From the IMG/VR virus record IMGVR_UViG_3300027816_000052, positions 124,001 through 188,000 of that record: 64,000 nucleotides of DNA; one strand, written 5' to 3'. Both the position numbers and the translations under genes were made by a program. The notes beneath the pieces were generated by a model that was given only the letters and a program-made list of their open reading frames with translations, searched no databases and had not been told where the DNA came from. The first letter of the stretch is position 1; each line of letters opens with the position of its first letter. This document shows, piece by piece, positions 2,004 through 40,771 of this stretch.

Positions 2004-2228
2004 TTAATCGATATATTCAAATTCAGATTCAAGTAATTTAATTCTACTCCCATCATCAAGTTCTACCCATTTAAATCTAGAATCAAGATAATAATAACCT
2101 AACATACCATTATAATTTTTATGATTGTTAGTAATCTTAATTCGCTTTCTAAATGTATAAATTGGTTTATGATAAACTGATGTAATTTCCCACCCGTCTG
2201 GTGTTTTATCTCCAATTTTATAATCCAT
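2004..2228 (-). CDS. Hypothetical protein (74 aa)
   Basis: ORF in leftward run. Confidence 0.7.
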   Translation of the reverse strand: MDYKIGDKTPDGWEITSVYHKPIYTFRKRIKITNNHKNYNGMLGYYYLDSRFKWVELDDGSRIKLLESEFEYID

Positions 2229-2245
2229 ATTATTTAATTTTAAGT

Positions 2246-2686
2246 TTAGTAGGTTCCATGTTCAATTCTACCAATTTCGTTTATAATTTCTTCAGGTTTC
2301 ATATCAATGACCCGACCACCATTTGCTTTAGAATACGGTGTCGTACTTAATAACCATTCATTAAGTTCTTTTTTATTACCGAATGTATCAATACCCATCT
2401 CAAGAATTTTTGGGTTTTGTTCTAAAAATACAGATGTTTCACTCATATCAAAATAACGTTTAATTTTTTTTATATCATTAGGATTAATAATCATTGAATC
2501 AAAATCACCATATCTTGATTTATATCCAAAAATATATTTTATTGCAACACCAATTCGTTTAAAAAAGTTACGATGTTGTTGTAAGTGCGGCATAAAATGA
2601 ACATCATTAAATTCTTCATCATACCAAAATGCGTATGTATGTTCAAGTGAACCACATTCACAAATAAAAATTTCTGTTTTTTCCAT
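2246..2686 (-). CDS. Phage protein with C-terminal Xre/MbcA/ParS antitoxin-like (DUF2384-type) domain
   Basis: C-terminus GIDTFGNKKELNEWLLSTTPYSKANGG...EIINEIGRIEHGTY matches the remembered pattern FG...WL...GG...RIEHG. Confidence 0.6.
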   Translation of the reverse strand: MEKTEIFICECGSLEHTYAFWYDEEFNDVHFMPHLQQHRNFFKRIGVAIKYIFGYKSRYGDFDSMIINPNDIKKIKRYFDMSETSVFLEQNPKILEMGIDTFGNKKELNEWLLSTTPYSKANGGRVIDMKPEEIINEIGRIEHGTY

Positions 2687-2687
2687 A

Positions 2688-2825
2688 TTATTTAATTTTA
2701 TAACTTAAAAAGGACCAAAATCCCCATTCAATAACAACATACTCAAAGGTATCATTTTTTTCAAAAAAACCAATGGGTAACCAATAAAAAGGTCCACCTT
2801 CAAAAAAACATTCAATTTTAATCAT
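2688..2825 (-). CDS. Small aromatic-rich protein (45 aa) not in the ORF track
   Basis: Manual translation MIKIECFFEGGPFYWLPIGFFEKNDTFEYVVIEWGFWSFLSYKIK; exactly fills the gap between two genes. Confidence 0.6.
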   Translation of the reverse strand: MIKIECFFEGGPFYWLPIGFFEKNDTFEYVVIEWGFWSFLSYKIK

Positions 2826-22939: not shown

Positions 22940-23656
22940 ATGAAAAAGATTAAATTAACAGAATCAGATTTATATAGGATTGTTAGAAAGGTTCTTCTTG
23001 AGCAAGAGGAAGAAAATAACAGAAGAATTTTTAATGAGAATCCAGAATATTTTAAAACGATTCTTAAAAATGTATTTAAAAATGATTCTAAGAAATTAAC
23101 AAGGTTTTTTAATAAACAATACGATAAGGTTATTATTAATGGAAGTTTGAATTTAGAAGGAGCACCAATTCAATCCTTACCGGATAATCTTTATGTTGGG
23201 GAAAATTTGTATTTAAGTGAAACACCAATTCAATCCTTACCGGATAATCTTTATGTTGGGGGGGAGTTAGATTTATCTTATTGTGAAGAAATTGAAACTT
23301 TACCTGAAACTCTTGAAGTTAAGGGTAATATTGATTTATCCTATTCGTCAATAAAATATTTACCCGATAACTTTAAAGTACCAAAAAACCTATTTTTAGA
23401 TTATTCTAAATTAGAACATTTACCGGATAATCTCACGGTTGGAAATAATTTAATAGTAAGGAGCACACTTATAACAAAACTACCAAATAATTTAAAAGTT
23501 GGTGGTAAATTAAATATCCGCAATACAGAGGTGGAAGAATTACCTGATGATTTAGAAGTAAAATCTCTTATTTTAATAGATTTTACACCATTGTCTTATA
23601 ACTTAGATTTACAAAAGAAATACAAGGAAAAAGGTTTTATACTATATACCAATTAA
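22940..23656 (+). CDS. Leader-tagged leucine-rich-repeat protein LRR-1 (start revised to MKKIK)
   Basis: MKKIKLTESDLYRIVRKVLLEQ leader, then about 7 repeats of 20-21 aa (L.L..T.I..LPDNL.V). Confidence 0.85.
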   Translation: MKKIKLTESDLYRIVRKVLLEQEEENNRRIFNENPEYFKTILKNVFKNDSKKLTRFFNKQYDKVIINGSLNLEGAPIQSLPDNLYVGENLYLSETPIQSLPDNLYVGGELDLSYCEEIETLPETLEVKGNIDLSYSSIKYLPDNFKVPKNLFLDYSKLEHLPDNLTVGNNLIVRSTLITKLPNNLKVGGKLNIRNTEVEELPDDLEVKSLILIDFTPLSYNLDLQKKYKEKGFILYTN

Positions 23657-23721
23657 ATTATCTTATCACAATATGTTGTTTTTTATTGGTTTTTTCTTAT
23701 ATTTTAAGAAAATCTAATAAT

Positions 23722-24714
23722 ATGGCACTTAAGAAAAAAGAAATTACATTAGCGGATATTAAGAATAAATTTTCGACCAAAACAAAATATAAGGAAACCC
23801 AGTTTTATAATTGTGGTGAAGCGTTTTTGGATGCTTGTGGTTTACCGGGACCGGTGATGGGTTCTATAAATTTGTTTATGGGTCATTCAGACACGTCAAA
23901 ATCGACAGCAATGATTTTATCTGCGGTTGATGCACAAAGTAAGGGTCATTTACCCGTATTTATTATTACGGAGAAGAAATTCAGTTGGGAACATGCTATT
24001 GAATTGGGGTTGGACGCACAATTAGATTCAGATGGTTCTTATGTTGGTCAATTTATTTATAATGATTCATTTGATTATGTTGAACAAGCAACCGATTATA
24101 TTAATTCATTATTAGATGCACAAGAAAAGGGGGAGTTACCGTACAATCTATTATTTTGTTTCGACAGTATTGGTTCAATTCCTTGTTTGGCAACATACGA
24201 AGGAAAGGGTGGCGGCATGCATACGGCTAAGGTATTGGCGGATAAGATTGGCATGGGACTTCATTCTAGAATTACTAAATCTAGAAAAGAAGAATATCCG
24301 TATATAAATACTATGGTTGTAATCAACCAAGTTTGGATTGAAATTCCAGATAATCCATATAGTCAACCTGTAGCAAAACCTAAAGGTGGGGAAGCTTTAT
24401 TTTTTTCGGCAGCATTAGTATTTTTATTTGGTAATCATAAAAATTCTGGTGTATCGCACATTACTGCGACAAAAAATGGTAGAACGGTATCATTTGCTAC
24501 AAGAACTAAGATATCAATATTAAAGAATCACATTAATGGTATATCGTTTAAAGATGGTAAAATTATCGCAGTACCTCAAGGGTATATTAAAGACGATAAA
24601 GCAGACATTGATAAATATAAAAAGCAATATTCACAATATTGGAATAAAATATTAGGTGGTGGTGATGATGATATTAATTTAGAAGAAGGTAAAGATGAAT
24701 TATTTGAATCATAA
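23722..24714 (+). CDS. recA: RecA/UvsX-like recombinase
   Basis: P-loop GHSDTSKST, FITEKKF, Walker B FCFDSIGS, VINQVW, PKGGEALFF, KNHING. Confidence 0.85.
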   Translation: MALKKKEITLADIKNKFSTKTKYKETQFYNCGEAFLDACGLPGPVMGSINLFMGHSDTSKSTAMILSAVDAQSKGHLPVFIITEKKFSWEHAIELGLDAQLDSDGSYVGQFIYNDSFDYVEQATDYINSLLDAQEKGELPYNLLFCFDSIGSIPCLATYEGKGGGMHTAKVLADKIGMGLHSRITKSRKEEYPYINTMVVINQVWIEIPDNPYSQPVAKPKGGEALFFSAALVFLFGNHKNSGVSHITATKNGRTVSFATRTKISILKNHINGISFKDGKIIAVPQGYIKDDKADIDKYKKQYSQYWNKILGGGDDDINLEEGKDELFES

Positions 24715-24760
24715 TTTGTTAATAATAACAACTTTTTATAAAATCTAGATATTTATTAAT

Positions 24761-24919
24761 ATGGGAAGAAAGAAAATAACTAACGAAGAAAAAAAACAAA
24801 GTATTTCTATTGCTCTGAAACCGGAGTTATTAGAATATTTTCGCGGACTCCATATTAATCTTTCTTCTCTAATAAATAAATTATTAGAGGATTATAAAAA
24901 TGGAAAAGAAAATATGTAA
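24761..24919 (+). CDS. Small ribbon-helix-helix-like DNA-binding protein (52 aa), not in the ORF track
   Basis: Manual translation MGRKKITNEEKKQSISIALKPELLEYFRGLHINLSSLINKLLEDYKNGKENM; TATTTATT 4 nt upstream; overlaps the start of the next gene. Confidence 0.7.
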   Translation: MGRKKITNEEKKQSISIALKPELLEYFRGLHINLSSLINKLLEDYKNGKENM

Positions 24920-25934
24920 TAAATGTGGAATCGAAGCTCTTATATCGAACCAAGGAAAAGGTTTTTGTGAGACTTGTCGAGTTTTGGACATTAAAGAACA
25001 ACGAAGTCGTAAATATTTTGAAAAAAAAGAGCAAGAGAGGTTAGAGTTATTTTATAGGGATTGTCCGATTTGTGGGAAAGTAATAACCTATAAAACAAGT
25101 AATGGATGTTATAAAGCTAATAAAAAAAACACATCTTGTTTGACTTGTTGTAAAATGGGCGAAAAAAATCCTTTTTATGGTAAAATCCATACCGCTGAAA
25201 GTATGGATAGAATGAAGAAGACCACACTAGAAAGTGAAAAAAGAAAAGACTTTTGGAAAAGACAACAAACACAAGAATTTAGAGATAAATTAAGTGAAAC
25301 TTTAAAGATAAGACAACCAAATAAAGGTAAGGGTTATTATAAAGCGTGGATTAGAGATTATGGGTTAGAAGTTGCAAACCAAATGGTAAAAGAATTTGGT
25401 GATAGAATATCTAAAACAGCTAAAGGTAAACGCTTAGGGATACCACCAAAACACGGGATTGCATGTGGTAACGGATGGTCTGGTTGGTATAAAGAATATT
25501 TCTTTAGAAGTGTTGGTGAGTTAAGTTTTATAATAAATGTGATTGAGAGATTTGGATTTAATGCGATTTCGGCTGAAAGTCAGAAATATAAAGTGCGTTA
25601 TTTTATAGATGGTTTTGAAAGAAATTATTTTCCGGACTTTGTTTTAAATGATAAGTACGTAGTTGAATGTAAACCAAAAAAATTACAAGAAATACCTCAT
25701 AATAAAATTAAGTTTGATGCCGCTAAATTAAAATTCAAAGAAGATGGTTTAATCTTTAAGGTTGTTGACATTCCAATTATTGATTTTAATCTATTATTAG
25801 ATTTACATGATAAGGATTTAATAAAATTTTCTAAAAAAACAAATGAAAAATTTATGGTATACGTTGAAAAGAAAAAAGATATTAAATCTTTTATTGATAA
25901 AATATCTCAGAATATTACTAAACCTTTAACTTAA
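24900..25934 (+). mobile_element. Homing endonuclease with NUMOD3-like motif and TnsA-like PD-(D/E)xK domain
   Basis: Zn-finger CxxC pairs, GEKNPFYGKIHTAES, FRSVGELSF, RNYFPDFVLNDKYVVECKP. Confidence 0.75.
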
Positions 25935-25938
25935 TAAA

Positions 25939-26712
25939 ATGATTCTAAATTATAAAAAACCGCAACCACTTAATTTAGATTCTGTGGTCTTCGTACCAAT
26001 AAGAAAATGTCGAAAATGTGCTGAGATTAAACCGTATTCAGAATTTAGAAAAGAAAAAAATAGAAAATTTGGTATTAGACATATATGTAAAGAATGTAAT
26101 AACATTAGAATAAAAAAATTGAGAGAAAAAAATCCTGAAAAAGTAAGAGAACATGAGAAAAAATGGAGAGAAAAAAATCCTGAAAAAGTAAAGGAAAAAA
26201 ATAAAAGATGGATGAAAAAAAATCCTGAAAAAGCAAAGGAAAAGAATAAAATATGGAGAGAAAAAAATCCTGAAAAAAGAAATCTAATAAATAGAAGATA
26301 TTTAAATAAAAATTTAAATCAAATTATGGAAAGACGTAAAAAAAGAATGGATAAAAACCCCGAATATAAACTAAGAATACTTATGTCATATAGATTAAGT
26401 AAAATGTTTAAACAAAAAAAACTAGCAAAAAATAGCAAAACTCTAGAAATATTAGGAACATCATTTAATAATTTTAAATGTTATCTAGAATCTCAATTTA
26501 ATGACGGAATGACATGGGAAAATCATGGTAAGGTGTGGCAAATTGATCATAAGGTACCGGTATCATATGGAAAAAATGAAGAGGAAATATGTAAGCTAAA
26601 TCATTATACAAATCTTCAACCACTATTCACCTTAGAAAACCAAAAAAAAAGCGATAAACTCCTCCCAGAACACGAAGAGTTATATAAAAAGCTATTAAAT
26701 AGAGAGTTATAA
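25939..26712 (+). mobile_element. HNH-type homing endonuclease
   Basis: CRKC/CKEC, KNPEK repeats, MTWENHG..WQIDHKVP...NHYTNLQPL...NQKKSDK. Confidence 0.85.
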
Positions 26713-26739
26713 TTTTCAAAAAACAAAAAACAAAAAAAC

Positions 26740-27360
26740 ATGAAAATACTCGAATTATTCGCAGGAAGTCGTTCATTCTCAAAGGTAGCAGAAGAACTTG
26801 GTCATCAAACATTTTCAGTTGACTGGGGACCATATGAGAATATTGATTTAAAAATGGACATTAAAGAAATGACCATTAATCATGTTCCTTTTGTACCAGA
26901 TGTTATTTGGTGTTCACCTGATTGCACAACTTATTCAATCGCAGCAATTAGCACACACAGAAATGGTACAGAACCAAAAAGCGAATATGCAAAAGAATGT
27001 GATTTAACAAATCAGCATTTTATTTCTTTAATCAAAGAATGGTTAGTAATTAATCCAAACTTAATCTTCTTTATAGAAAATCCAAGAGGAATGCTAAGAA
27101 AGATGCCATTTATGCAAGAATTTAAGCGACATACTACTTGGTATTGCAAGTATGATGATGAAAGAGCCAAACCCACAGATATTTGGACAAATTCAACAAC
27201 TTGGATACCAAGACCGGTTTGTAAAAATGGTAATAAAGAATGTCATCACCAACCAGCACCAAGGGGTTCAAAAACTGGAACGCAAGGTAGAGGTAATTCG
27301 TATGAGAGAAGTAAAATTCCTTATGAATTATGTTTAGAAATACTTAATAGCATACAATAA
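26740..27360 (+). CDS. Short C5-cytosine DNA methyltransferase-like protein
   Basis: Motif I ELFAGSRS, motif IV WCSPDC, motif VI FIENP; no obvious target-recognition domain. Confidence 0.75.
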   Translation: MKILELFAGSRSFSKVAEELGHQTFSVDWGPYENIDLKMDIKEMTINHVPFVPDVIWCSPDCTTYSIAAISTHRNGTEPKSEYAKECDLTNQHFISLIKEWLVINPNLIFFIENPRGMLRKMPFMQEFKRHTTWYCKYDDERAKPTDIWTNSTTWIPRPVCKNGNKECHHQPAPRGSKTGTQGRGNSYERSKIPYELCLEILNSIQ

Positions 27361-27361
27361 C

Positions 27362-27559
27362 ATGAAACTCTATATTCACGAAGGACCGGGACATTGTGTT
27401 GGTAGTGTTGTTATCGTGGTTTCAGATAATTATGAAACCGCATATGAAATCATTTCAAAACGACTGGATGATATGGGATTAAACAAAGAGAATATTTCAA
27501 TTATAGAAAAAGAAATAATCAATAACGAGATTGTTTTTTCAAAAAGTGGTGATTATTAA
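27362..27559 (+). CDS. Hypothetical protein (65 aa)
   Basis: ORF coupled to the methyltransferase stop. Confidence 0.65.
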   Translation: MKLYIHEGPGHCVGSVVIVVSDNYETAYEIISKRLDDMGLNKENISIIEKEIINNEIVFSKSGDY

Positions 27560-28094
27560 TCTGGAAAATTAAAAAATAATAGGTAAACATCACCATCTCT
27601 AAAATCATCTGAAATTATTACACCATCCATTTCTTCCCAATTTTTTTTACTTAATCTATCAAATTTTGTAATAATTAAAGGTCTTTCTTCACCCCATTTT
27701 GTGGTAATAATTGTATTACCTTCATCATCAATTCCAGTTTTACCTCTTAACATGAAAGGTATTGGATAATCCATATACATTGACCCGTTTTCATAACCTT
27801 CATCTTTTAAATATTTTCTTGCGTTACCAATTGCGTCAAAGGTTTCTGTTGCGGTGAAAAATTTACTATAAACAATTACCCTATCACTTATTGCATAAAC
27901 ACCATTAATATTTGGAAAAACTTCACCAACCTTTTTACCAATAATATCATAAGCTGTTTCATCTTCTTTAAGAACTCGTTTAACTAAATTAATTAAGTCA
28001 GATTCCGTTAATCTTATTATTTTTTTCATAGTGTGTTATTTTAATGTAAATATCTTTAAAAGTAAAAAGCCAAAAAAGTGGTGATTATTAATCT
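27541..28094. repeat. 22-bp direct repeat AAAAAGTGGTGATTATTAATCT at 27541-27562 and 28073-28094
   Basis: Exact match read from the sequence; each copy contains the stop codon of a minus-strand cargo gene. Confidence 0.9.
27556..28029 (-). CDS. Leader-tagged protein of unknown function (157 aa)
   Basis: MKKIIRLTESDLINLVKRVLKE leader; body unrelated to the LRR genes. Confidence 0.8.
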   Translation of the reverse strand: MKKIIRLTESDLINLVKRVLKEDETAYDIIGKKVGEVFPNINGVYAISDRVIVYSKFFTATETFDAIGNARKYLKDEGYENGSMYMDYPIPFMLRGKTGIDDEGNTIITTKWGEERPLIITKFDRLSKKNWEEMDGVIISDDFRDGDVYLLFFNFPD

Positions 28095-28875
28095 CTACTA
28101 ATTCTATATTTTTCTTCATATTTCGCAACCAATTCATCATTATCTTTTAATGGTGTTTCACGAATATAAATTATCCCATTAACATAAAGATTATCCCCTA
28201 AGGATTTAATTGGTGTTCCATTTAACCACAAATCTCCCCCAACACGAAGATTATCCGGTAAGGATTGAATTGGTGTTTCAGTTAAATCCAACCTTCCCTC
28301 AACATGAAGATTATCCGGTAAGGATTGAATTGGTGTTCCTCGTAAATACAAACTTCCCCCAACATGAAGATTATCCGGTAAGGATTGAATTTGCGTTCCT
28401 TCTAAATCCAAATTTCCCTTAACGTCAAGATTATCCGGTAAGGATTGAATTGGTGTTCCATTTAACCACAAACTTCCCCCAACACGAAGATTATCCGGTA
28501 AGGATTGAATTTGTGTTCTTTGTAAATACAAACTTCCCCCAACACGAAGATTATCCGGTAAGGATTTAAGATTTTTGCATCCATATAAATTCAAATATCC
28601 CTCAACATGAAGATTATCCGGTAAGGATTGAATTTGTGTTTTTTCTAAATCCAAACCCCCATTAACAACAATCTCATCATATTTGTTATTAAGATGTTTA
28701 ACAAATCTTTCACCTGATGATGATGTTATAAAAGATGCAAATGCTCCCGGAGAAAATGTAAAACTTCTCTTTTCTTCCTCCTGTTCAAAAAGAACTTGTT
28801 TAATTATCCTATATAAATCTGATTCTGTTAATTTAATCTTTTTCATAACCATAAATATCATTAAAAGTAAAAAGC
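28047..28875. repeat. 24-bp direct repeat TAAATATC[T/A]TTAAAAGTAAAAAGC at 28047-28070 and 28852-28875
   Basis: One mismatch; each copy holds the TATTTA motif upstream of a minus-strand cargo gene. Confidence 0.9.
28088..28846 (-). CDS. Leader-tagged LRR protein LRR-2 (8 repeats plus cap)
   Basis: MKKIKLTESDLYRIIKQVLFEQ leader; G.L.L..T.IQSLPDNL.V repeats with 60/63-bp DNA period. Confidence 0.9.
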   Translation of the reverse strand: MKKIKLTESDLYRIIKQVLFEQEEEKRSFTFSPGAFASFITSSSGERFVKHLNNKYDEIVVNGGLDLEKTQIQSLPDNLHVEGYLNLYGCKNLKSLPDNLRVGGSLYLQRTQIQSLPDNLRVGGSLWLNGTPIQSLPDNLDVKGNLDLEGTQIQSLPDNLHVGGSLYLRGTPIQSLPDNLHVEGRLDLTETPIQSLPDNLRVGGDLWLNGTPIKSLGDNLYVNGIIYIRETPLKDNDELVAKYEEKYRISRD

Positions 28876-28933
28876 ACGTCTTTAATAAACAAGATTCATA
28901 TGATATTTATGGTTTAAATAGACACCCCAAGTC

Positions 28934-29482
28934 ATGAATCAAAGACGACTAATAAAAAAAATATTATTGGAATATACCAATGAGCAAAAAGATGAATATC
29001 AAGACATTGCGCTTGATAATTTATCAAAAATTGGTGATTTTAATAGATTACGTGAAATTGATAAATTAACGTTGCTTGGAAGAAGTGGTGACACACAAAA
29101 GCTAAAACGATTAATGTTATCAAGAATTTATGAAGAAAAGGGTAATACATTTGGAATGCTTGAAATAAAGGTTAAGATAAAGGATTTAAAGGAACAAGCG
29201 GTTAAAAGTAAATTTTCAGAAGAGTTTGCGGGTGAAGAGGGGTATTTACTTCCCTCTATACAGTATTTTGATGACATTCCCTATGTTAGTGTTAAATTTA
29301 AACGTTTTGAACCAAGCGATAAAGCACTTGGTGGTGGTAATTATGAAAGCAGAGTTATACCTCTAGCTAATGTCTATCCTTTGTCTTATGAAAAAATCGA
29401 CGATGAATTTGTTAAATATCAACAAAGAGTTGAAAGAGAAAGAAAAGAATTTAAAGATAGATTTGGACTTGATGAGTTTTGA
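28934..29482 (+). CDS. Hypothetical protein with leader-like N-terminus (RRLIKKILLEY)
   Basis: ORF preceded by ATGATATTTATGGTT, shared with the LRR genes. Confidence 0.75.
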   Translation: MNQRRLIKKILLEYTNEQKDEYQDIALDNLSKIGDFNRLREIDKLTLLGRSGDTQKLKRLMLSRIYEEKGNTFGMLEIKVKIKDLKEQAVKSKFSEEFAGEEGYLLPSIQYFDDIPYVSVKFKRFEPSDKALGGGNYESRVIPLANVYPLSYEKIDDEFVKYQQRVERERKEFKDRFGLDEF

Positions 29483-29511
29483 TTGTTATATTTTAGCAAA
29501 AATATAAAACA

Positions 29512-29955
29512 ATGAATACTTTCGGAACATCTATTATGGTTCAATATAATAAGTTATTTAAAGATAATTTTGAACCACCTCATTTAATTATTATTAAAAA
29601 TAAAGCAATTAAGTTTTATGAAAAAGAGTTGGAAAAACCAAATAAAAAATGGTTTGGTTGGGGATTTTTTAATGATGAAAATGAAAAAATCAATCTTCTA
29701 GATAAAATTTTTAATTCGAAACCGAATACAAAACTTCTTACACTAAAAAAACCCTCACATCCGGATTGTGATGTTGAATTTATTTATTTTGGGAATAATA
29801 TGAAGTATGAAATTTTAAAAAGCGTCCCCGTTGATTTAAATACACCAACAAATGAAATGTCTGAAATTCAAATAAATTTAACTAAAGAAAAGCAACCAGA
29901 TATTCATTATAAGTTTAGTGTAAATGAAGAAGGTGAATTTGTTGAATTTAATTAA
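29512..29955 (+). CDS. Hypothetical protein (147 aa)
   Basis: ORF with A-rich start context. Confidence 0.7.
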   Translation: MNTFGTSIMVQYNKLFKDNFEPPHLIIIKNKAIKFYEKELEKPNKKWFGWGFFNDENEKINLLDKIFNSKPNTKLLTLKKPSHPDCDVEFIYFGNNMKYEILKSVPVDLNTPTNEMSEIQINLTKEKQPDIHYKFSVNEEGEFVEFN

Positions 29956-29963
29956 TTTTATTA

Positions 29964-30959
29964 ATGACAAAAACTTTATTAATTGATGGTGATAATCTCT
30001 TTAAGATTGGTTATCATGCAATAAATTACTTACATAAAGGAAAACATGTTGGAGCAATTTTTCATTTCATTAATACAATAAAAAAATTATTGGAGTCAGA
30101 AAATTACGATAAGGTTGTTGTGTTTTGGGATGGTGAAAATAATTCAATTACCAGAAAAAGAATTTATTCAAAATATAAGGAAACCAGAAAAACTCCAATG
30201 GAGGATTATGAACTAGAATCTTATCTATATCAAAGAATTAGAATCAAACAATATCTTGAAGAAATATTCGTTCGACAAATTGAATTTCCTGAAACCGAAT
30301 CCGATGATTTAATTGCGTATTATTGTCAAATCTCACCAGATGAAAATAAAATAATATTTTCAGCGGATAGAGATTTAATTCAATTAATAAATAAAGATGT
30401 TTCAGTTTATTCACCAAATACAAAAACAACATATAAATTTGGTGACAAAATCAAATTAAAAGATTGTATAATTCCTCATTATAATTTAACAACATATAAA
30501 ATTCTAATTGGTGATAAGTCAGATAACATTGACGGAATTTATCGATTGGGTGAGAAGAATCTTATAACTTTTTTTCCTGAGATACTTGATAAACCGGTAA
30601 GTTATTCCGATATTTTGAATAAGTCAAAAGACTTGGTTAAGGAAAGTAATAGTAACGTTTTAAAAAATATTTTAAGTGGGAAGACGAAAGATGGTGAGCA
30701 CGGAGATGAGTTCTTCGAAAGAAATGACAAGATTATTAATCTCACAAACCCCCTCATATCAGAGGAAGCAAAAAAAATTGTTGAACTTTATTGTCATGAA
30801 TCTTTAGACCCTGATGGTAGGGGTTATAAGGGATTCATTAAAATGATGAATGAGGACGGTTTCTTCAAATTCTTACCAAAATATAATAATGATTGGGTTG
30901 ATTTTATTCGACCATTTTTAAAGCTAACCAGAAAAGAAAAACGAAATTTTAATAACTAA
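29964..30959 (+). CDS. 5'-3' exonuclease (PolI N-terminal/T4 RNase H-like flap nuclease)
   Basis: LLIDGDNL, VVFWDG, RKRIYSKYKETR, ESDDLIA, SADRDL, GDKSDNIDGI. Confidence 0.9.
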   Translation: MTKTLLIDGDNLFKIGYHAINYLHKGKHVGAIFHFINTIKKLLESENYDKVVVFWDGENNSITRKRIYSKYKETRKTPMEDYELESYLYQRIRIKQYLEEIFVRQIEFPETESDDLIAYYCQISPDENKIIFSADRDLIQLINKDVSVYSPNTKTTYKFGDKIKLKDCIIPHYNLTTYKILIGDKSDNIDGIYRLGEKNLITFFPEILDKPVSYSDILNKSKDLVKESNSNVLKNILSGKTKDGEHGDEFFERNDKIINLTNPLISEEAKKIVELYCHESLDPDGRGYKGFIKMMNEDGFFKFLPKYNNDWVDFIRPFLKLTRKEKRNFNN

Positions 30960-31457: not shown

Positions 31458-33908
31458 ATGGGTAAAGATAAAAATTTCGAGTATCTCGGACAAACATTTC
31501 AGCTTCAATTGATTAACCAAATTATCATTGACAAAATATTCGGCTCATCAATTATTGACGTTATGGAAGTCTCTTATTTCGAGAATAAGTATTTTAAAAT
31601 TGTTGTTCAATTTATTAAGGAACATTATGGAAAATATAATGAAATTCCTTCATTTACAACTTTAAAACAAATTATTAAATCTGAGTTAGCACAGGATTTT
31701 CTTGTAAAGGTTGCAATTGATACCTTGGAATCAATAAAAAATGTGTCAACTGACGGTGCTGAGTTTGTACAAGAAAAAGCTTTAAAGTTTTGTAAACAAC
31801 AAGAACTGAAAAAAGTAATGACTAAAGCACAAAAAATTATCGATGGTGGTGAATTTGAAAATTATGACCAAGTTGAATCTTTGGTTAGGAACGCACTTCA
31901 GGTTGGTGAATTGGATAAGGGTCAGATAGATGTTTTTGACGATACTGAGGGCGTTTTAAGTGAGGATTTCAGACATCCGATTGCGATGGGTATTAAGGGT
32001 ATTGATAAGCTCTTAAAGGGTGGTTTAGCGAGGGGTGAAATTGGTGTTATTCTCGCCCCGACAGGGGTGGGCAAAGCCCAAAATGTTAGTGAACCAATTT
32101 TAACACCAACAGGTTGGACCGAAATAGGAAATATTAAACTTGGTGATAAAATAATTGGTTCCGATGGTAATGAACAATATGTGATTGGCGTTTATCCGCA
32201 AGGTCAACGTCCAATTTATAAAATTGAATTTACTGATGATACACATACTTTTTGTGATGCAGAACATTTATGGTATGTTAATACATTAAACATGCGTACA
32301 AGAAAAACACGCATAAAAAATGTGAATAACTATGCTCCGAATTATGGGTATAAAGTGATTAAAACTAGCGATATGTTAGTTGATATAAAAAAACGAGGTA
32401 GATATAATTATAGACTACCTATTGTTAATCCTATTAATTTTAACGAAAAAGATATATTAATTAATCCTTATTTATTGGGTATTTTATTGGGGGATGGTTA
32501 TTTATCTGCAAAAGATAGTATTACTTTAAGTACTAAAGATGATGAAATATTTGATAATATTTCTAATTTAAATCTACACACATCATTTTCTGAATACCAT
32601 AGGGACACTAAAACAATTAAAGTTGTTCGCATTAAAAATGTTATTAAACCTCATTTAACTCATTATGGTTTACTTGGTATGAAATCTGACCAAAAGTTTA
32701 TACCGAAAGATTATATTTTTAATTCAGTAAATAATAGACTTGAATTATTGAGAGGATTAATGGATACTGATGGTTATGCGGATAAAAGAGGTTGTTGTCA
32801 ATTTACAACTGTTTCAGAACAATTAGCAAAAGATGTTAGAGAAATTGTTCTTTCTTTAGGTGGTACAGCTAAAATTAAAACAAAAATACCTAAATATAAG
32901 TATAAAGGTGAGGTAAAGGATGGTAAAATGGCTTATACTGTAACAATATCGTTTGCAAATAATATTGTTCCGTTTAAGTTGTTAAGAAAAGTAAATAGGT
33001 TCGTAAAAAGAAAAAAATATATTGAACAAAAATATATTAAATCAATAAACTATTCTCACGATGAAGAAGCTGTTTGCATAAAAGTATCAAATCCTGATGA
33101 ATTATATGTTACTAGAGATTATGTGTTAACACATAATACAACCGTAATGACAAAAATTGCAAATCACGCATATAATTTGGGTTTCAATGTCCTTCAAATC
33201 TTCTTTGAAGACAATCCAAAAATCATTCAGCGCAAGCATTTTACGATGTGGACCGGAATTAAACCCGATGATTTGACCGCAAATAAGGAAGAAGTTTTGG
33301 AAACGGTTAAAGAGTTGAGAAGTACCTTACCCAATAAATTGATTCTAAAGAAGTTACCTTCAGAATCATTAACCATGTCAAACATTAAAAATCAGGTAAG
33401 AAAAATAATTTCTGAGGGCGTTAAGATTGATTTAATTTGCTTGGATTATATCGATTGTGTATTACCAGAAAAATTCAATGGTGATGAATGGAAGGGTGAG
33501 GGTTCGGTTATCAGAGCATTTGAAGCAATGTGTCATGAATTGGATATTGTTGGATGGACCGCGACCCAAGGTAATCGATCCAGTATTTCAGCAGATGTTG
33601 TAACAACTGACCAAATGGGTGGTAGCATTAAAAAAGCACAAGTTGGTCACGTTATCATATCAATTGCTAAATCTCTTGAACAAAAAGACCAAAAACTTGC
33701 GACAATTGCAATTACAAAATCAAGAATTGGTTCTGATGGTGTGGTGTTTGCAAACTGCAAATTTGACAATGAAATGCTTATTATTGATACAGAGGAATCA
33801 AAAACATTATTAGGTCATGAAAAAGAGGTTGAAGAAATTAATGAAATGAATGCAAAAAAACGATTAGGTGAATTACAATCTAATAAAAAAAGAACAACAA
33901 TAAATTAA
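31458..33908 (+). CDS. dnaB: DnaB-like replicative helicase, intein-interrupted
   Basis: GGLARGEIGVILAPTGVGK|TT Walker A, CLDYIDC, WTATQGNR, IAITKSRIG. Confidence 0.9.
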   Translation: MGKDKNFEYLGQTFQLQLINQIIIDKIFGSSIIDVMEVSYFENKYFKIVVQFIKEHYGKYNEIPSFTTLKQIIKSELAQDFLVKVAIDTLESIKNVSTDGAEFVQEKALKFCKQQELKKVMTKAQKIIDGGEFENYDQVESLVRNALQVGELDKGQIDVFDDTEGVLSEDFRHPIAMGIKGIDKLLKGGLARGEIGVILAPTGVGKAQNVSEPILTPTGWTEIGNIKLGDKIIGSDGNEQYVIGVYPQGQRPIYKIEFTDDTHTFCDAEHLWYVNTLNMRTRKTRIKNVNNYAPNYGYKVIKTSDMLVDIKKRGRYNYRLPIVNPINFNEKDILINPYLLGILLGDGYLSAKDSITLSTKDDEIFDNISNLNLHTSFSEYHRDTKTIKVVRIKNVIKPHLTHYGLLGMKSDQKFIPKDYIFNSVNNRLELLRGLMDTDGYADKRGCCQFTTVSEQLAKDVREIVLSLGGTAKIKTKIPKYKYKGEVKDGKMAYTVTISFANNIVPFKLLRKVNRFVKRKKYIEQKYIKSINYSHDEEAVCIKVSNPDELYVTRDYVLTHNTTVMTKIANHAYNLGFNVLQIFFEDNPKIIQRKHFTMWTGIKPDDLTANKEEVLETVKELRSTLPNKLILKKLPSESLTMSNIKNQVRKIISEGVKIDLICLDYIDCVLPEKFNGDEWKGEGSVIRAFEAMCHELDIVGWTATQGNRSSISADVVTTDQMGGSIKKAQVGHVIISIAKSLEQKDQKLATIAITKSRIGSDGVVFANCKFDNEMLIIDTEESKTLLGHEKEVEEINEMNAKKRLGELQSNKKRTTIN
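32076..33137 (+). mobile_element. Ala-start (class 3-type) intein with LAGLIDADG endonuclease in the helicase Walker A (354 aa)
   Basis: Begins AQNVSEPILTPTGW, ends VLTHN, +1 Thr; EHLW, AVCIKV, LTHN give the WCT triad; LLGILLGDG and LLRGLMDTDG motifs. Confidence 0.9.
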
Positions 33909-37165: not shown

Positions 37166-38302
37166 TTATACATAAAACCTATAACCCTTTACCTGATATT
37201 TCAAAATCAAATCAATATCATTATTTAACGGAGTTCCACCGATTGAAATAACACCTACAACCTTAAGATTATCCGGTAAGGATTGAATTGGTGTTCCTAC
37301 TAAACTCAAATCTCCCCCAACATGAAGATTATCCGGTAAGGATTTAAGATTTTTGCATCCATATAAATTCAAATTTCCCCCAACATGAAGATTATCCGGC
37401 AAGGATTGGATTGGTGTATCATATAACTCCAAATTTTTCTTAACATGAAGATTATCCGGTAAGGATTTAATTGGTGTTTCATTTAACCACAAATCTCCCC
37501 CAACATGAAGATTATCCGGTAAGGATTGAATTGGTGTTCCTACTAAACTCAAATCTCCCCCAACATGAAGATTATCCGGTAAGGATTTAAGATTTTTGCA
37601 TCCATATAAATTCAAATTTCCCCCAACATGAAGATTATCCGGCAAGGATTGGATTGGTGTATCATATAACTCCAAATTTTTCTTAACATGAAGATTATCC
37701 GGTAAGGATTTAATTGGTGTTTCATTTAACCACAAATCTCCCCCAACATGAAGATTATCCGGTAAGGATTGAATTGGTGTTCCTACTAAACTCAAATCTC
37801 CCCCAACATGAAGATTATCCGGTAAGGATTGAATTGGTGTTCCTACTAAACTCAAATTTCCCCCAACATGAAGATTATCCGGTAAGGATTGAATTGGTGT
37901 TCCTACTAAACTCAAACTTCCCCCAACACGAAGATTATCCGGTAAGGATTGAATTGGTGTTCCTCTTAAATACAAACTTCCCCCAACATGAAGATTATCC
38001 GGTAAGGATTGAATTGGTGTTCCTTGTAAATACAAACTTCCCCCAACATGAAGATTATCCGGTAATGATTGAATTTGTGTATCTCTTAAATCCAAATCCC
38101 CATTAATAATAACCTTATCATATTGTTTATTAAAAACTCTTGTTAATTTCTCAGAATCATTTCTAAATACATTTTCAAGAATCGTTTTAAAATATTCTGG
38201 ATTCTTATTGAAGATTCTTCTGTTATTTTCTTCCTCTTGCTCAAGAAGAACCTTTCTAACAATCCTATATAAATCTGATTCTGTTAATTTAATCTTTTTC
38301 AT
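37166..38302 (-). CDS. Leader-tagged LRR protein LRR-3 (14 repeats plus cap)
   Basis: Leader almost identical to LRR-1; 14 units of 20-21 aa. Confidence 0.9.
   Translation of the reverse strand: MKKIKLTESDLYRIVRKVLLEQEEENNRRIFNKNPEYFKTILENVFRNDSEKLTRVFNKQYDKVIINGDLDLRDTQIQSLPDNLHVGGSLYLQGTPIQSLPDNLHVGGSLYLRGTPIQSLPDNLRVGGSLSLVGTPIQSLPDNLHVGGNLSLVGTPIQSLPDNLHVGGDLSLVGTPIQSLPDNLHVGGDLWLNETPIKSLPDNLHVKKNLELYDTPIQSLPDNLHVGGNLNLYGCKNLKSLPDNLHVGGDLSLVGTPIQSLPDNLHVGGDLWLNETPIKSLPDNLHVKKNLELYDTPIQSLPDNLHVGGNLNLYGCKNLKSLPDNLHVGGDLSLVGTPIQSLPDNLKVVGVISIGGTPLNNDIDLILKYQVKGYRFYV
37265..38100. repeat. Coding tandem repeat, 60/63-bp unit, with an exact 243-bp higher-order duplication
   Basis: Core AAGATTATCCGGTAAGGATT; identical blocks begin at 37265, 37508 and 37751. 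Confidence 0.92.
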
Positions 38303-40683: not shown

Positions 40684-40740
40684 TTTATATGTTGAATTAA
40701 AAATAAAATAAAATTTTTTAAAAAAAATCAATCTTTTTTT

Positions 40741-40771
40741 TTTGGATATATTTATCAAATAGGTAATTTTG
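40741..40771 (+). promoter_or_regulatory. Bacteroidota sigmaA-type promoter (TTTG-N19-TAATTTTG) with an internal TATTTATC motif
   Basis: Exact consensus spacing; TATTTATC at 40749 lies in the spacer. Confidence 0.65.

What the first reader, a model, noticed from the sequence alone, without database searches (positions are those of the whole stretch)
27541..28875. Two tandem gene cassettes with identical flanking boxes but unrelated cargo
Seen: the layout is [A22]-157-aa gene-[B24]-CA-[A22]-LRR-2 gene-[B24]. A22 = AAAAAGTGGTGATTATTAATCT (27541 and 28073, exact). B24 = TAAATATC(T/A)TTAAAAGTAAAAAGC (28047 and 28852, one mismatch). B24 holds the promoter-like motif; A22 holds the stop codon and duplicates the 3' end of the convergent 65-aa gene. 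The two genes share only the leader. Inference: cargo genes are stacked as promoter-to-stop cassettes by recombination at short boxes, giving an integron-like accordion with no visible integrase. The phage RecA could act on these boxes.
Basis: partly seen in the sequence, partly recalled or inferred. Interest (0 to 1): 0.75.

Follow-up and report, generated by a model that had tools for sequence, protein, structure and literature searches.

The report
Stacked late-gene cassettes in a jumbo phage
Two unrelated accessory genes of a T4-like jumbo phage sit in duplicated copies of one short promoter-to-stop frame, a one-off scar of the modular gene shuffling already known in T4-type phages and not an integron; a real integron-like cassette array lies elsewhere in the same genome.

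Summary
A22 occurs twice exactly (27541, 28073). B24 occurs twice with one mismatch (28047, 28852). Neither has another copy in the 256-kb genome, even at 5 mismatches. Both genes are on the minus strand and share only a 24-residue leader.

The locus lies in a 5.2-kb accessory island between a RecA-like gene and the flap-endonuclease gene; these two genes are adjacent in about 35 relatives. In the nearest diverged lineage the 65-aa gene abuts the 182-aa gene and both cassettes are absent. In another relative the 157-aa cargo sits next to the tail-sheath gene, 29 kb away.

The right A22 copy is a pseudo-copy of the last six codons of the 65-aa gene. B24 carries the genome-wide late-type promoter motif TATTTAT.

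Best reading: one cassette frame was duplicated and its cargo replaced through very short homologies. This resembles PeSL modular shuffling and the T-even internal-protein locus.

It is not an integron. There is no hairpin site, each gene has its own promoter, and no copy-number variants or circles were seen.

Separately, at 236-245 kb, about 13 attC-like hairpin sites lie directly upstream of a conserved Xer-like recombinase. Relatives carry the same kind of array with entirely different cargo.

The parts
23686..24714 (+). RecA/UvsX-like gene (342 aa), the conserved left border of the accessory island
   Evidence: Weak Pfam RecA match, E=0.0043, below the cut-off. Directly followed by the flap-endonuclease gene in about 35 relatives.
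24715..29963 (.). Accessory (hyperplastic) island. It holds a NUMOD3/TnsA-like endonuclease gene, an HNH-like gene, a DNA methyltransferase, the 65-aa gene, the two cassettes, and the 182-aa and 147-aa genes.
   Evidence: Absent between the g342 and g331 homologs in about 35 related contigs. Family matches.
27362..27559 (+). 65-aa gene, convergent with the 157-aa gene. Its last six codons and stop lie in A22 copy 1.
   Evidence: ORF list. A homolog at 69% identity lies directly before the g182 homolog in L014.
27541..27562 (+). A22 copy 1. This is the original: native 3' end of the 65-aa gene, overlapping the stop of the 157-aa gene.
   Evidence: Exact repeat. L014 has AAAAAGTGGAGATTATTAG at the end of its 65-aa gene homolog.
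27556..28029 (-). 157-aa cargo gene with an MKKIIRLTESDL leader. No family or fold match.
   Evidence: A homolog with 92% nucleotide identity in the gene body sits at the tail-sheath locus in L007/L008.
28030..28046 (-). 17-nt spacer (5' UTR) between the promoter motif and the ATG of the 157-aa gene
   Evidence: Sequence. A metatranscriptome contig ends at 28032.
28047..28070 (-). B24 copy 1: late-type promoter motif (GATATTTA on the minus strand, 28047-28054) plus 16 nt upstream
28071..28072 (.). Duplication junction ('CA'; in L096 it reads GC|CAAAAAG)
28073..28094 (+). A22 copy 2: a non-coding pseudo-copy of the 3' end of the 65-aa gene, holding the stop of the LRR gene
28088..28846 (-). LRR-like gene (252 aa, eight 20-residue repeats). 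It is one of at least 10 dispersed paralogs with the leader MKKIKLTESDLYRI.
28852..28875 (-). B24 copy 2, ending 5 nt before the ATG of the LRR gene. Its promoter-proximal 14 nt are shared with paralog m227504.
28876..28892 (.). Insert-specific sequence of unknown origin. Homology with the empty slot of L014 resumes at 28893 (ATTC...).
28847..28914 (.). Perfect 15-nt inverted repeat AACCATAAATATCAT / ATGATATTTATGGTT: two divergent copies of the promoter motif, one for the LRR gene (minus strand) and one for the 182-aa gene (plus strand)
   Evidence: I4. Fold z-scores -3.2 and -5.1. The copy on the 182-aa gene side is native, since L014 has GAATATTTATGGTAG there.
28934..29482 (+). 182-aa gene, right neighbour of the slot
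29964..30959 (+). Flap endonuclease / RNase H-like gene (331 aa), the conserved right border of the island
   Evidence: The precomputed Pfam listing gives PF02739 (5_3_exonuc_N) for this 331-aa gene and its homologs. Synteny.

Best explanation
The window comes from a T4-like jumbo phage of fresh water (256 kb, 30% GC). The locus lies in a hypervariable accessory island.

Each of the two minus-strand genes is a self-contained late-gene cassette. It has a late-type promoter with only a -10 element (TATTTAT), a very short 5' UTR, a shared N-terminal leader of about 24 residues, an unrelated cargo domain, and a stop codon. There is no terminator.

The identical boxes are the two ends of one cassette frame that exists twice. 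The most likely history has three steps:
1. An LRR-family cassette was inserted convergently against the end of the 65-aa gene, using the 8-nt overlap TTAATAAT.
2. The segment from C-A22 to B24 was duplicated in tandem by an illegitimate join (...AAAAAGC|CAAAAAG...), or by unequal crossing-over between two co-infecting genomes that carried different cargo in the same frame.
3. In one copy the cargo was replaced by the 157-aa gene. The crossovers fell at the promoter motif or leader on the 5' side and in the last codon and stop (A GAT TAA) on the 3' side.

Shown: the duplication, the absence of the cassettes in a relative, the different location of the 157-aa cargo in a relative, and the late-gene association of the motif. 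Inferred: the order of events, the role of the phage's general recombination system, and the function of the leader.

The boxes are a scar of this history and re-used regulatory sequence. They are not sites of a dedicated recombinase.
For: Boxes:
- Real and unique to this locus.
- A22 copy 2 reproduces the last six codons of the 65-aa gene. That sequence is native to that gene in a relative without cassettes, so it must be a duplicate.
- In L096 the duplicate is 23 nt and the junction is a blunt join.

Frame versus cargo:
- Only the leader is shared between the two proteins.
- Window versus L007 identity for the 157-aa gene: 53% over the 45 nt upstream, 70.5% in the leader, 91.9% in the body, 41% downstream. 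The body moves on its own history.
- Among LRR paralogs, homology begins at the promoter motif and ends at the stop.
- The 14 promoter-proximal nt of B24 are shared with paralog m227504. The TTAATAAT after the stop is shared with paralog m42894.

Gain, loss and movement:
- The island is absent in about 35 relatives.
- The slot is empty in L014 and L172-L174.
- The 157-aa cargo lies next to a homing-endonuclease-like gene at the tail-sheath locus in L007/L008. Our genome has only a terminator hairpin there.

Late-type promoter:
- The motif is found upstream of 64 of 281 ORFs, with no -35 element.
- It precedes the prohead protease, tail sheath and tail lysozyme genes and is absent before the replication genes.
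- 10 of 14 leader-bearing genes carry it.

T4-like nature: gp21-type protease and gp23-type capsid protein.

Precedent: recombination at short conserved regulatory motifs shuffles ORFans in hyperplastic regions of T4-type phages (PMC2839356, PMC4122927).
Against: - No intermediate was found. No contig has a single cassette between the same boxes, so the order of events rests on inference.
- The arrangement is fixed over about 6% divergence and in several samples. Any shuffling here is rare.
- The origin of the distal 10 nt of B24 and of 28876-28892 is unknown.
- The 5' UTR of the 157-aa gene is not clearly homologous to that in L007, so the donor is unknown.
- The read evidence is only assembled Logan contigs, which drop rare variants.
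- Contigs L096, L179 and L180 join this LRR gene to other genomic contexts. They may be assembly chimeras or real recombinants between LRR paralogs, and I could not tell which.
Confidence: 0.65

Rival explanations
1. An active cassette-stacking system. A22 and B24 would be recombination sites at which promoter-to-stop cassettes are repeatedly inserted, excised as circles and stacked, either by a dedicated enzyme or preferentially by the phage recombinase.
For: Identical boxes flank unrelated cargo. The cassettes are absent in one relative and the cargo lies elsewhere in another. PeSL mini-circles give a precedent in T4-type phages.
Against: - Only two copies of each box in 256 kb, even at 5 mismatches.
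- All carriers have the same two cassettes.
- No skip or back joints between box copies in four runs.
- No secondary structure at the composite box.
- In L007 the cargo has neither box.
- The genome's tyrosine recombinase has its own, different sites.
Confidence: 0.1
2. An old tandem duplication of one gene, followed by divergence. The two genes would be full-length homologs whose middles have diverged beyond recognition, with the flanks and leader kept by selection.
For: The leader and both flanks are shared, and a tandem arrangement is typical of duplications.
Against: - The boxes are 100% and 96% identical, the leaders about 70% at nucleotide level, and the rest is unrelated. This gradient is the reverse of what neutral decay would give.
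- The LRR gene has at least 9 close paralogs elsewhere.
- The 157-aa gene has its own family of non-LRR homologs in other phages.
- The predicted fold of the 157-aa protein is a mixed alpha/beta domain, not a repeat solenoid.
Confidence: 0.03
3. Co-conversion driven by homing endonucleases. The cassettes would be copied in during repair of double-strand breaks made by the neighbouring endonucleases (g344 NUMOD3/TnsA-like, g257 HNH-like; a 505-aa endonuclease-like gene next to the 157-aa gene in L007). The box duplications would come from template switching during that repair.
For: The island holds two endonuclease-like genes within 2 kb. In L007 the 157-aa gene directly follows an inserted 505-aa gene that our genome lacks. 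In L014, L096 and L097 a Cas12f-like TnpB gene occupies the endonuclease position, so this spot turns over.
Against: There is no evidence for a cleavage site at the boxes. The endonuclease genes differ between the lineages that share the cassette pair. This explains delivery, not the duplicated frame. It is compatible with the best explanation as the trigger of the event.
Confidence: 0.15

Closest known systems
PeSL (promoter-early stem-loop) modular shuffling in hyperplastic regions of T4-type phages (Arbiol et al. 2010, PMC2839356; Comeau et al. 2014, PMC4122927)
   Same: Both occur in T4-like phages, in hyperplastic regions between core genes. In both, ORFans that differ between relatives are bounded by a short composite of the upstream gene's stop and the next gene's promoter, and each ORF brings its own promoter. 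Indels and replacements are explained by recombination in these motifs, without an integrase.
   Different: PeSLs are about 100 bp, number about 50 per genome, carry sigma-70-type early promoters and hold a stable stem-loop terminator. Here the long boxes occur only twice, the promoter is a late-type -10-only motif, there is no stem-loop, and no circles were seen.
Polymorphic internal-protein (IP) genes of T-even phages, which share only the capsid targeting sequence (PMC3012670, PMC9026906)
   Same: Unrelated, fast-evolving cargo proteins share only a short N-terminal leader. The leader contains L/I-x-E, the cleavage motif of the gp21 prohead protease, and this genome encodes a gp21-type protease. 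The genes carry the promoter motif that here precedes virion structural genes.
   Different: The T4 capsid targeting sequence is 10 residues (MKTYQEFIAE), whereas this leader has about 24 residues and a different sequence. Packaging, cleavage and injection are untested here. The leader genes are dispersed through the genome and are not at one IP locus.
Phage morons
   Same: An extra gene with its own promoter is inserted between two genes that are adjacent in related phages.
   Different: Classical morons carry a terminator and were described in temperate phages, where they are expressed from the prophage. Here there is no terminator and the phage is of the lytic T4 type.
Integron (IntI, attI, attC cassettes)
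   Same: Tandem single-gene units have repeated sequences at their borders.
   Different: Integron cassettes are promoterless and end in a folded attC hairpin that IntI recognises. Here each unit has a promoter, the borders do not fold, and no recombinase is adjacent. The same genome does contain a separate array of the attC type (see Noticed in passing).

Membership tests
Integron cassette array | Integron-type tyrosine recombinase next to the array | tested here: not met
   The only PF00589 match in the genome is at 244867-245667, about 93 kb from the locus. None lies in the island.
Integron cassette array | attC sites: imperfect inverted repeats with RYYYAAC...GTTRRRY ends that fold as hairpins | tested here: not met
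   The A22/B24 junction folds no better than shuffles (z = +0.35 as RNA; +0.23 and -1.04 as DNA). The attC-like heuristic finds nothing at the locus. There is no Rfam match.
Integron cassette array | Promoterless cassettes expressed from a common promoter | tested here: not met
   Each gene has its own TATTTA motif, 5 nt and 17 nt before the ATG.
Integron cassette array | Variable cassette number and content between close relatives | tested here: not met
   All box-bearing contigs have the same two cassettes. The only alternative state seen is the empty slot in a lineage about 80% identical.
PeSL regulatory cassettes | Location in a hyperplastic region, next to ORFans that differ between related T4-type phages | tested here: met
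PeSL regulatory cassettes | Sigma-70-like -35/-10 early promoter | tested here: not met
   Sigma-70-type matches are not above shuffle expectation (18 found, 17.2 expected). The conserved element is TATTTAT with no -35, and it is associated with structural genes.
PeSL regulatory cassettes | Stable stem-loop acting as terminator or attenuator | tested here: not met
   No terminator-like sites in 26700-29700. The intergenic fold is not better than shuffles.
PeSL regulatory cassettes | Many dispersed copies with about 100 bp of conservation | tested here: not met
   Only two copies of each box. Only the 8-nt promoter core is dispersed.
PeSL regulatory cassettes | Mini-circles or deletion forms from recombination between flanking motifs | tested here: inconclusive
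   None appear in Logan contigs of 2 DNA and 2 RNA runs, but contigs drop rare forms and raw reads were not available.
T4-type internal proteins with a capsid targeting sequence | gp21-type prohead protease encoded by the phage | tested here: met
   Peptidase_S77, 78.8 bits, at genome 56986-57708.
T4-type internal proteins with a capsid targeting sequence | Short shared N-terminal propeptide ending in L/I-x-E on otherwise unrelated proteins | tested here: met
   14 genes share the leader. They carry LTE or ITE at residues 6-9 and a second L/I-x-E near residue 21. The motif definition is from PMC9026906.
T4-type internal proteins with a capsid targeting sequence | Incorporation into the prohead, cleavage by the protease, ejection with the DNA | not testable with these tools
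   Needs virion proteomics or N-terminal sequencing.

The most novel reading that the evidence does not exclude
The shared leader may be a capsid-targeting propeptide. The late promoter plus leader would then form a re-usable loading frame into which this phage clade swaps cargo: at least 10 LRR proteins, the 157-aa protein and others. That would build a shufflable arsenal of proteins packaged in the head and injected into the host. On this reading the duplicated A22/B24 frame is a caught-in-the-act example of loading new cargo into an existing frame.
Probability: 0.2. Interest if true: 0.7.

Novelty: new variant of a known kind. Interest (0 to 1): 0.45.

Why it matters
The locus gives a cleanly resolved example, down to the junction nucleotides, of how a T4-like jumbo phage adds and replaces accessory genes without a site-specific recombinase. 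An existing promoter-to-stop frame is duplicated and its cargo exchanged through homologies of about 8 to 24 nt.

It extends the PeSL idea from early sigma-70 promoters with stem-loops to late-type promoters and a shared protein leader. It also points to a testable family of leader-tagged proteins that may be packaged.

It exposed a real integron-like array with a conserved Xer-like recombinase in this phage clade. That array may matter more than the original finding.

Tried and rejected
Function of the 157-aa protein:
- Pfam, PHROGs and the protein atlas gave nothing.
- An AlphaFold model (pLDDT 68.5) had no Foldseek match in PDB or BFVD.

Searches for relatives and variants:
- blastn of the locus against GenBank phages gave no match.
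- Synteny through the methyltransferase failed. The gene is promiscuous, and 60 of its 66 loci are unrelated contexts.
- The 182-aa gene brought only identical contigs from IMG/VR.
- Exact A22 scans of IMG/VR and JGI metagenomes returned only contigs with both copies 532 nt apart.

Ideas rejected or left open:
- Contigs L096, L179 and L180 looked like alternative contexts for the LRR gene. Their breakpoints fall inside LRR repeats shared with paralogs at 43 kb and at the contig start. I did not count them as evidence, because assembly chimeras cannot be told from real recombinants.
- I considered that B24 is native to the 157-aa gene. I rejected this because the upstream region in L007 is only 53% identical.
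- I considered excision through the AAAAAG microhomology at the box ends. I rejected this because the junction keeps both copies of that sequence.
- I looked for attC-like sites near the 157-aa gene homologs of other phages and found none adjacent.
- The similarity of the distal TGCTTTTT of B24 to the upstream region of LRRa may be only a terminator T-tail, so I did not use it.
Full report
OBSERVATION

- A22 (AAAAAGTGGTGATTATTAATCT) is exact at 27541 and 28073.
- B24 is at 28047 and 28852 with one T/A difference.
- 'CA' separates B24 from the second A22.
- Neither box appears in any of 100 dinucleotide shuffles at up to 3 mismatches.
- Neither has a further copy in the whole genome even at 5 mismatches.

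The two genes are on the minus strand: 157 aa at 27556-28029, and an LRR-like gene at 28088-28846 with eight 20-residue repeats. BLASTP aligns only residues 1-24 (15/24 identical) and nothing else. A22 contains the stop codon of both genes and, on the other strand, the last six codons and stop of the convergent 65-aa gene.

WHAT THE GENOME IS

The window is positions 124001-188000 of a 256,029-bp IMG/VR virus record with 29.9% GC. The genome encodes a gp21-type prohead protease (Peptidase_S77) and a gp23-type major capsid protein. It is therefore a T4-like jumbo myovirus. Runs that hold the locus are labelled freshwater or 'fungus' metagenomes.

THE PROMOTER MOTIF

The 7-mers most enriched in the 60 nt upstream of 281 crude ORF calls are TATTTAT and ATATTTA (64 and 54 observed against about 8 expected). 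Aligned on this core there is no conserved -35 region.

The motif precedes the prohead protease, a 1129-aa tail-sheath protein, a tail lysozyme and other genes of the structural modules. It is absent before the replication genes around the locus. By analogy with the -10-only late promoter of T4, I read it as the late promoter of this phage. This is an inference.

The GATATTTA of B24 is this motif. The other 16 nt of B24 go beyond any consensus, so the 23/24 identity of the two copies reflects common descent.

THE GENE FAMILIES

The LRR gene is one of at least 10 dispersed paralogs that all begin MKKIKLTESDLYRI. Four more genes, among them the 157-aa gene, share only the leader.

Among LRR paralogs, nucleotide homology starts at the promoter motif, 11-19 nt before the ATG, and ends at the stop codon. 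The family therefore spreads as promoter-to-stop units. Ten of the 14 leader genes carry the motif, against 64 of 281 genes overall.

The 157-aa protein has homologs in other large phages. All carry an MK..(I/L)(I/L)TE.QL-type leader and end in FFNFP(D/E). No family or fold match was found.

COMPARISON WITH RELATIVES

1. In about 35 contigs at about 60% protein identity, the backbone runs g2130-g74-g215-g274-g342 (RecA-like)-g331 (flap endonuclease)-g148-DnaB. There g342 abuts g331. Window 24715-29963 is therefore an accessory island.

2. The nearest diverged lineage (L014, and independently L172-L174) has methyltransferase, 65-aa gene, 182-aa gene and g331, all on the plus strand. Only 24-40 nt separate the stop of the 65-aa gene from the ATG of the 182-aa gene. 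Neither cassette is present.
   - The junction there reads ...AAAAAGTGGAGATTATTAG|ATTCCGAATATTTATGG...
   - The window therefore carries an insert of about 1.33 kb (27560-28892).
   - The A22 sequence is native to the 65-aa gene.
   - It follows that the second A22 copy, which no ORF precedes, is a duplicate of that gene's end.

3. A 94%-identical lineage (L096, L097) and identical contigs from other samples (L003, L004, L178) have the same two cassettes in the same order. In L096 the duplicated box is 23 nt and the junction is ...AAAAAAGC|CAAAAAGTGG..., a blunt join.

4. In L007 and L008 a homolog of the 157-aa gene lies after the tail-sheath gene and a 505-aa endonuclease-like gene. This place corresponds to genome position ~122.8 kb, 29 kb from our locus, and our genome has only a terminator hairpin there.
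   - Identity to the window is 53% over the 45 nt upstream, 70.5% in the leader, 91.9% in the body and 41% downstream.
   - The cargo body moves without either box.
   - L008 and the empty-slot contig L172 come from the same sample, so they may belong to one phage. This is an inference.

POPULATION DATA

Logan contigs of two DNA runs and of one run from an RNA library (which may contain DNA) cover 26745-28147 without a single difference. No joint links the box copies. This argues against frequent excision or deletion. Assembled contigs cannot exclude rare forms, however, and no raw reads were available.

In one metatranscriptome a 557-nt contig spans 27476-28032. That is the 157-aa gene from 3 nt before its ATG to 80 nt past its stop. 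Another contig begins 1 nt before the ATG of the 182-aa gene. This is suggestive of short leaders and is not proof.

STRUCTURE OF THE BOXES

The composite A22-CA-B24 has no terminator-like hairpin, and its fold is no better than shuffles as RNA or DNA. Sigma-70-type promoter matches in the region are at chance level.

The only strong symmetry is a perfect 15-nt inverted repeat at 28847-28861 and 28900-28914. It consists of two divergent copies of the promoter motif, for the LRR gene and for the 182-aa gene.

MOST LIKELY HISTORY

- The 14 promoter-proximal nt of B24 are shared with LRR paralog m227504.
- The TTAATAAT after the LRR stop is shared with paralog m42894, and it is also the reverse complement of the end of the 65-aa gene.

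An LRR cassette therefore probably first joined the 65-aa gene through this 8-nt overlap. The frame from C-A22 to B24 was then duplicated, either in one genome or by unequal crossing-over between co-infecting genomes. In one copy the cargo was replaced by the 157-aa gene, keeping the frame's promoter and its last four nucleotides plus stop (A GAT TAA, in frame for both genes).

Any history that fits the data needs at least one cargo replacement between the promoter motif and the stop codon, using homologies of about 8 nt or a little more. The enzymes are unknown. A RecA/UvsX-like gene lies 3 kb away (weak match) and two endonuclease-like genes lie within 2 kb.

COMPARISON WITH KNOWN SYSTEMS

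The closest precedent is PeSL-mediated modular shuffling in T4-type phages (PMC2839356, PMC4122927).
- Shared: the setting, the composite of stop and promoter, and integrase-free indels and replacements.
- Different: the promoter class, the lack of a stem-loop, the copy number, and the lack of circles.

The second precedent is the set of T-even internal proteins. These are diverse proteins that share only a capsid targeting sequence, which the gp21 protease removes after L/I-x-E (PMC3012670, PMC9026906). The leader here has LTE at residues 6-8 (7-9 in the 157-aa protein) and a second L-x-E near residue 21. The genome has a gp21-type protease, and the genes carry the late-type motif. Packaging is untested.

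The locus fails every defining feature of an integron that I could test.

SIDE RESULT

To test 'no visible integrase' I searched the genome for PF00589. I found a 266-aa tyrosine recombinase at 244867-245667. Its nearest matches are XerA, XerC/D and IntI, and it lacks the IntI-specific insert.

The 8.5 kb upstream of it holds about 13 small plus-strand ORFs. They are separated by imperfect palindromes of 48-150 nt bounded by ATAACG...TGTTAT, and several of these fold as strong single-strand hairpins. A simple detector finds 13 such sites in the genome, 11 of them in this stretch.

Homologs of the recombinase (56-80% identity) occur in 80 contigs of large phages.
- In the relatives' loci, 313 sites lie upstream of the gene and 10 downstream.
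- In the 45 loci with at least 4 kb upstream, there are 0 to 19 sites per locus.
- The 248 distinct elements have conserved ends that the detector did not impose: G after TAAC in 97% and T before GTTA in 99%.
- The ORFs between sites lie on the recombinase strand 208 times against 13.
- None of the 13 ORFs of our array that lie upstream of the recombinase has a homolog near the recombinase in 78 relatives, although the recombinase itself is conserved.

This is an integron-like architecture, with the recombinase at the far end of the array and in the same orientation as the cassettes. Clusters of attC sites in virulent phages have been reported (PMC9892861). In the library searched I found no description of a clade-wide array with a conserved Xer-like recombinase in jumbo phages. 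The sites have no sequence relation to A22 or B24, and none lies at the locus.

VERDICT

It is wrong in treating this as an integron-like, repeatedly acting system.

The locus is a new variant of a known kind of phage genome plasticity and is of moderate interest. The leader and late-promoter frame, and the separate integron-like array, are the leads worth following.

Noticed in passing
Outside the window, same genome: G000:C1:236200-245667 (L191:1200-10668): A candidate phage integron. About 13 attC-like imperfect palindromes (ATAACG...TGTTAT, 48-150 nt, several strong ssDNA hairpins) separate small plus-strand ORFs directly upstream of a 266-aa Xer/IntI-like tyrosine recombinase. In the loci of up to 80 related large-phage contigs the same recombinase is preceded by variable arrays (0 to 19 sites in the 45 loci with at least 4 kb upstream; 313 sites upstream against 10 downstream overall). 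Cargo is entirely different: no homolog of any of our 13 upstream array ORFs was found in 78 relatives..
   Followed up: partly
L014:2669-4557 (relative IMGVR_UViG_3300044732_001094); also L096 and L097: In relatives, the place that holds the two endonuclease-like genes in our genome (window 24900-26712) carries a 451-454-aa Cas12f1-like/TnpB-type protein (PF07282, E=1e-24). In L014 this is followed by a 4.6-copy array of period 66 nt, that is, a repeat of about 36 nt plus a spacer of about 30 nt. This may be a miniature phage-borne type V CRISPR locus.
   Followed up: partly
Genome-wide; in the window at 22940-23656, 28088-28846 and 37166-38302: At least 10 dispersed paralogs of a leader-tagged protein built of 20-residue LRR-like repeats (GTPIQSLPDNLHVGGSLYL). 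Repeat numbers vary. Metagenome contigs join different paralogs (L096, L179, L180), which may reflect either assembly chimeras or recombination and inversion between paralogs.
   Followed up: partly
window 31458-33908: The DnaB-type helicase gene (816 aa) carries an intein with a LAGLIDADG homing-endonuclease domain. The homolog in relative L172 has 460 aa and lacks it.
   Followed up: no
window 2205-2243 and 2663-2701 (minus strand): Two adjacent small minus-strand genes are each preceded by the same 19-nt sequence, TAAAATTAAATAATATGGA, which runs into the start codon. This is a second, smaller case of a repeated translation-start box before unrelated neighbours.
   Followed up: partly
Genome 87663 and 164724 (the latter is window 40724-40755): An exact 32-nt intergenic repeat, AAAATCAATCTTTTTTTTTTGGATATATTTAT, that ends in the late-type promoter motif occurs at two loci 77 kb apart.
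   Followed up: no
window 27476-28032 and 28933-29334: Metatranscriptome contigs (run X12) begin 3 nt and 1 nt before the ATGs of the 157-aa and 182-aa genes. This hints at leaderless or nearly leaderless late mRNAs. The 157-aa transcript runs 80 nt antisense into the 65-aa gene.
   Followed up: no
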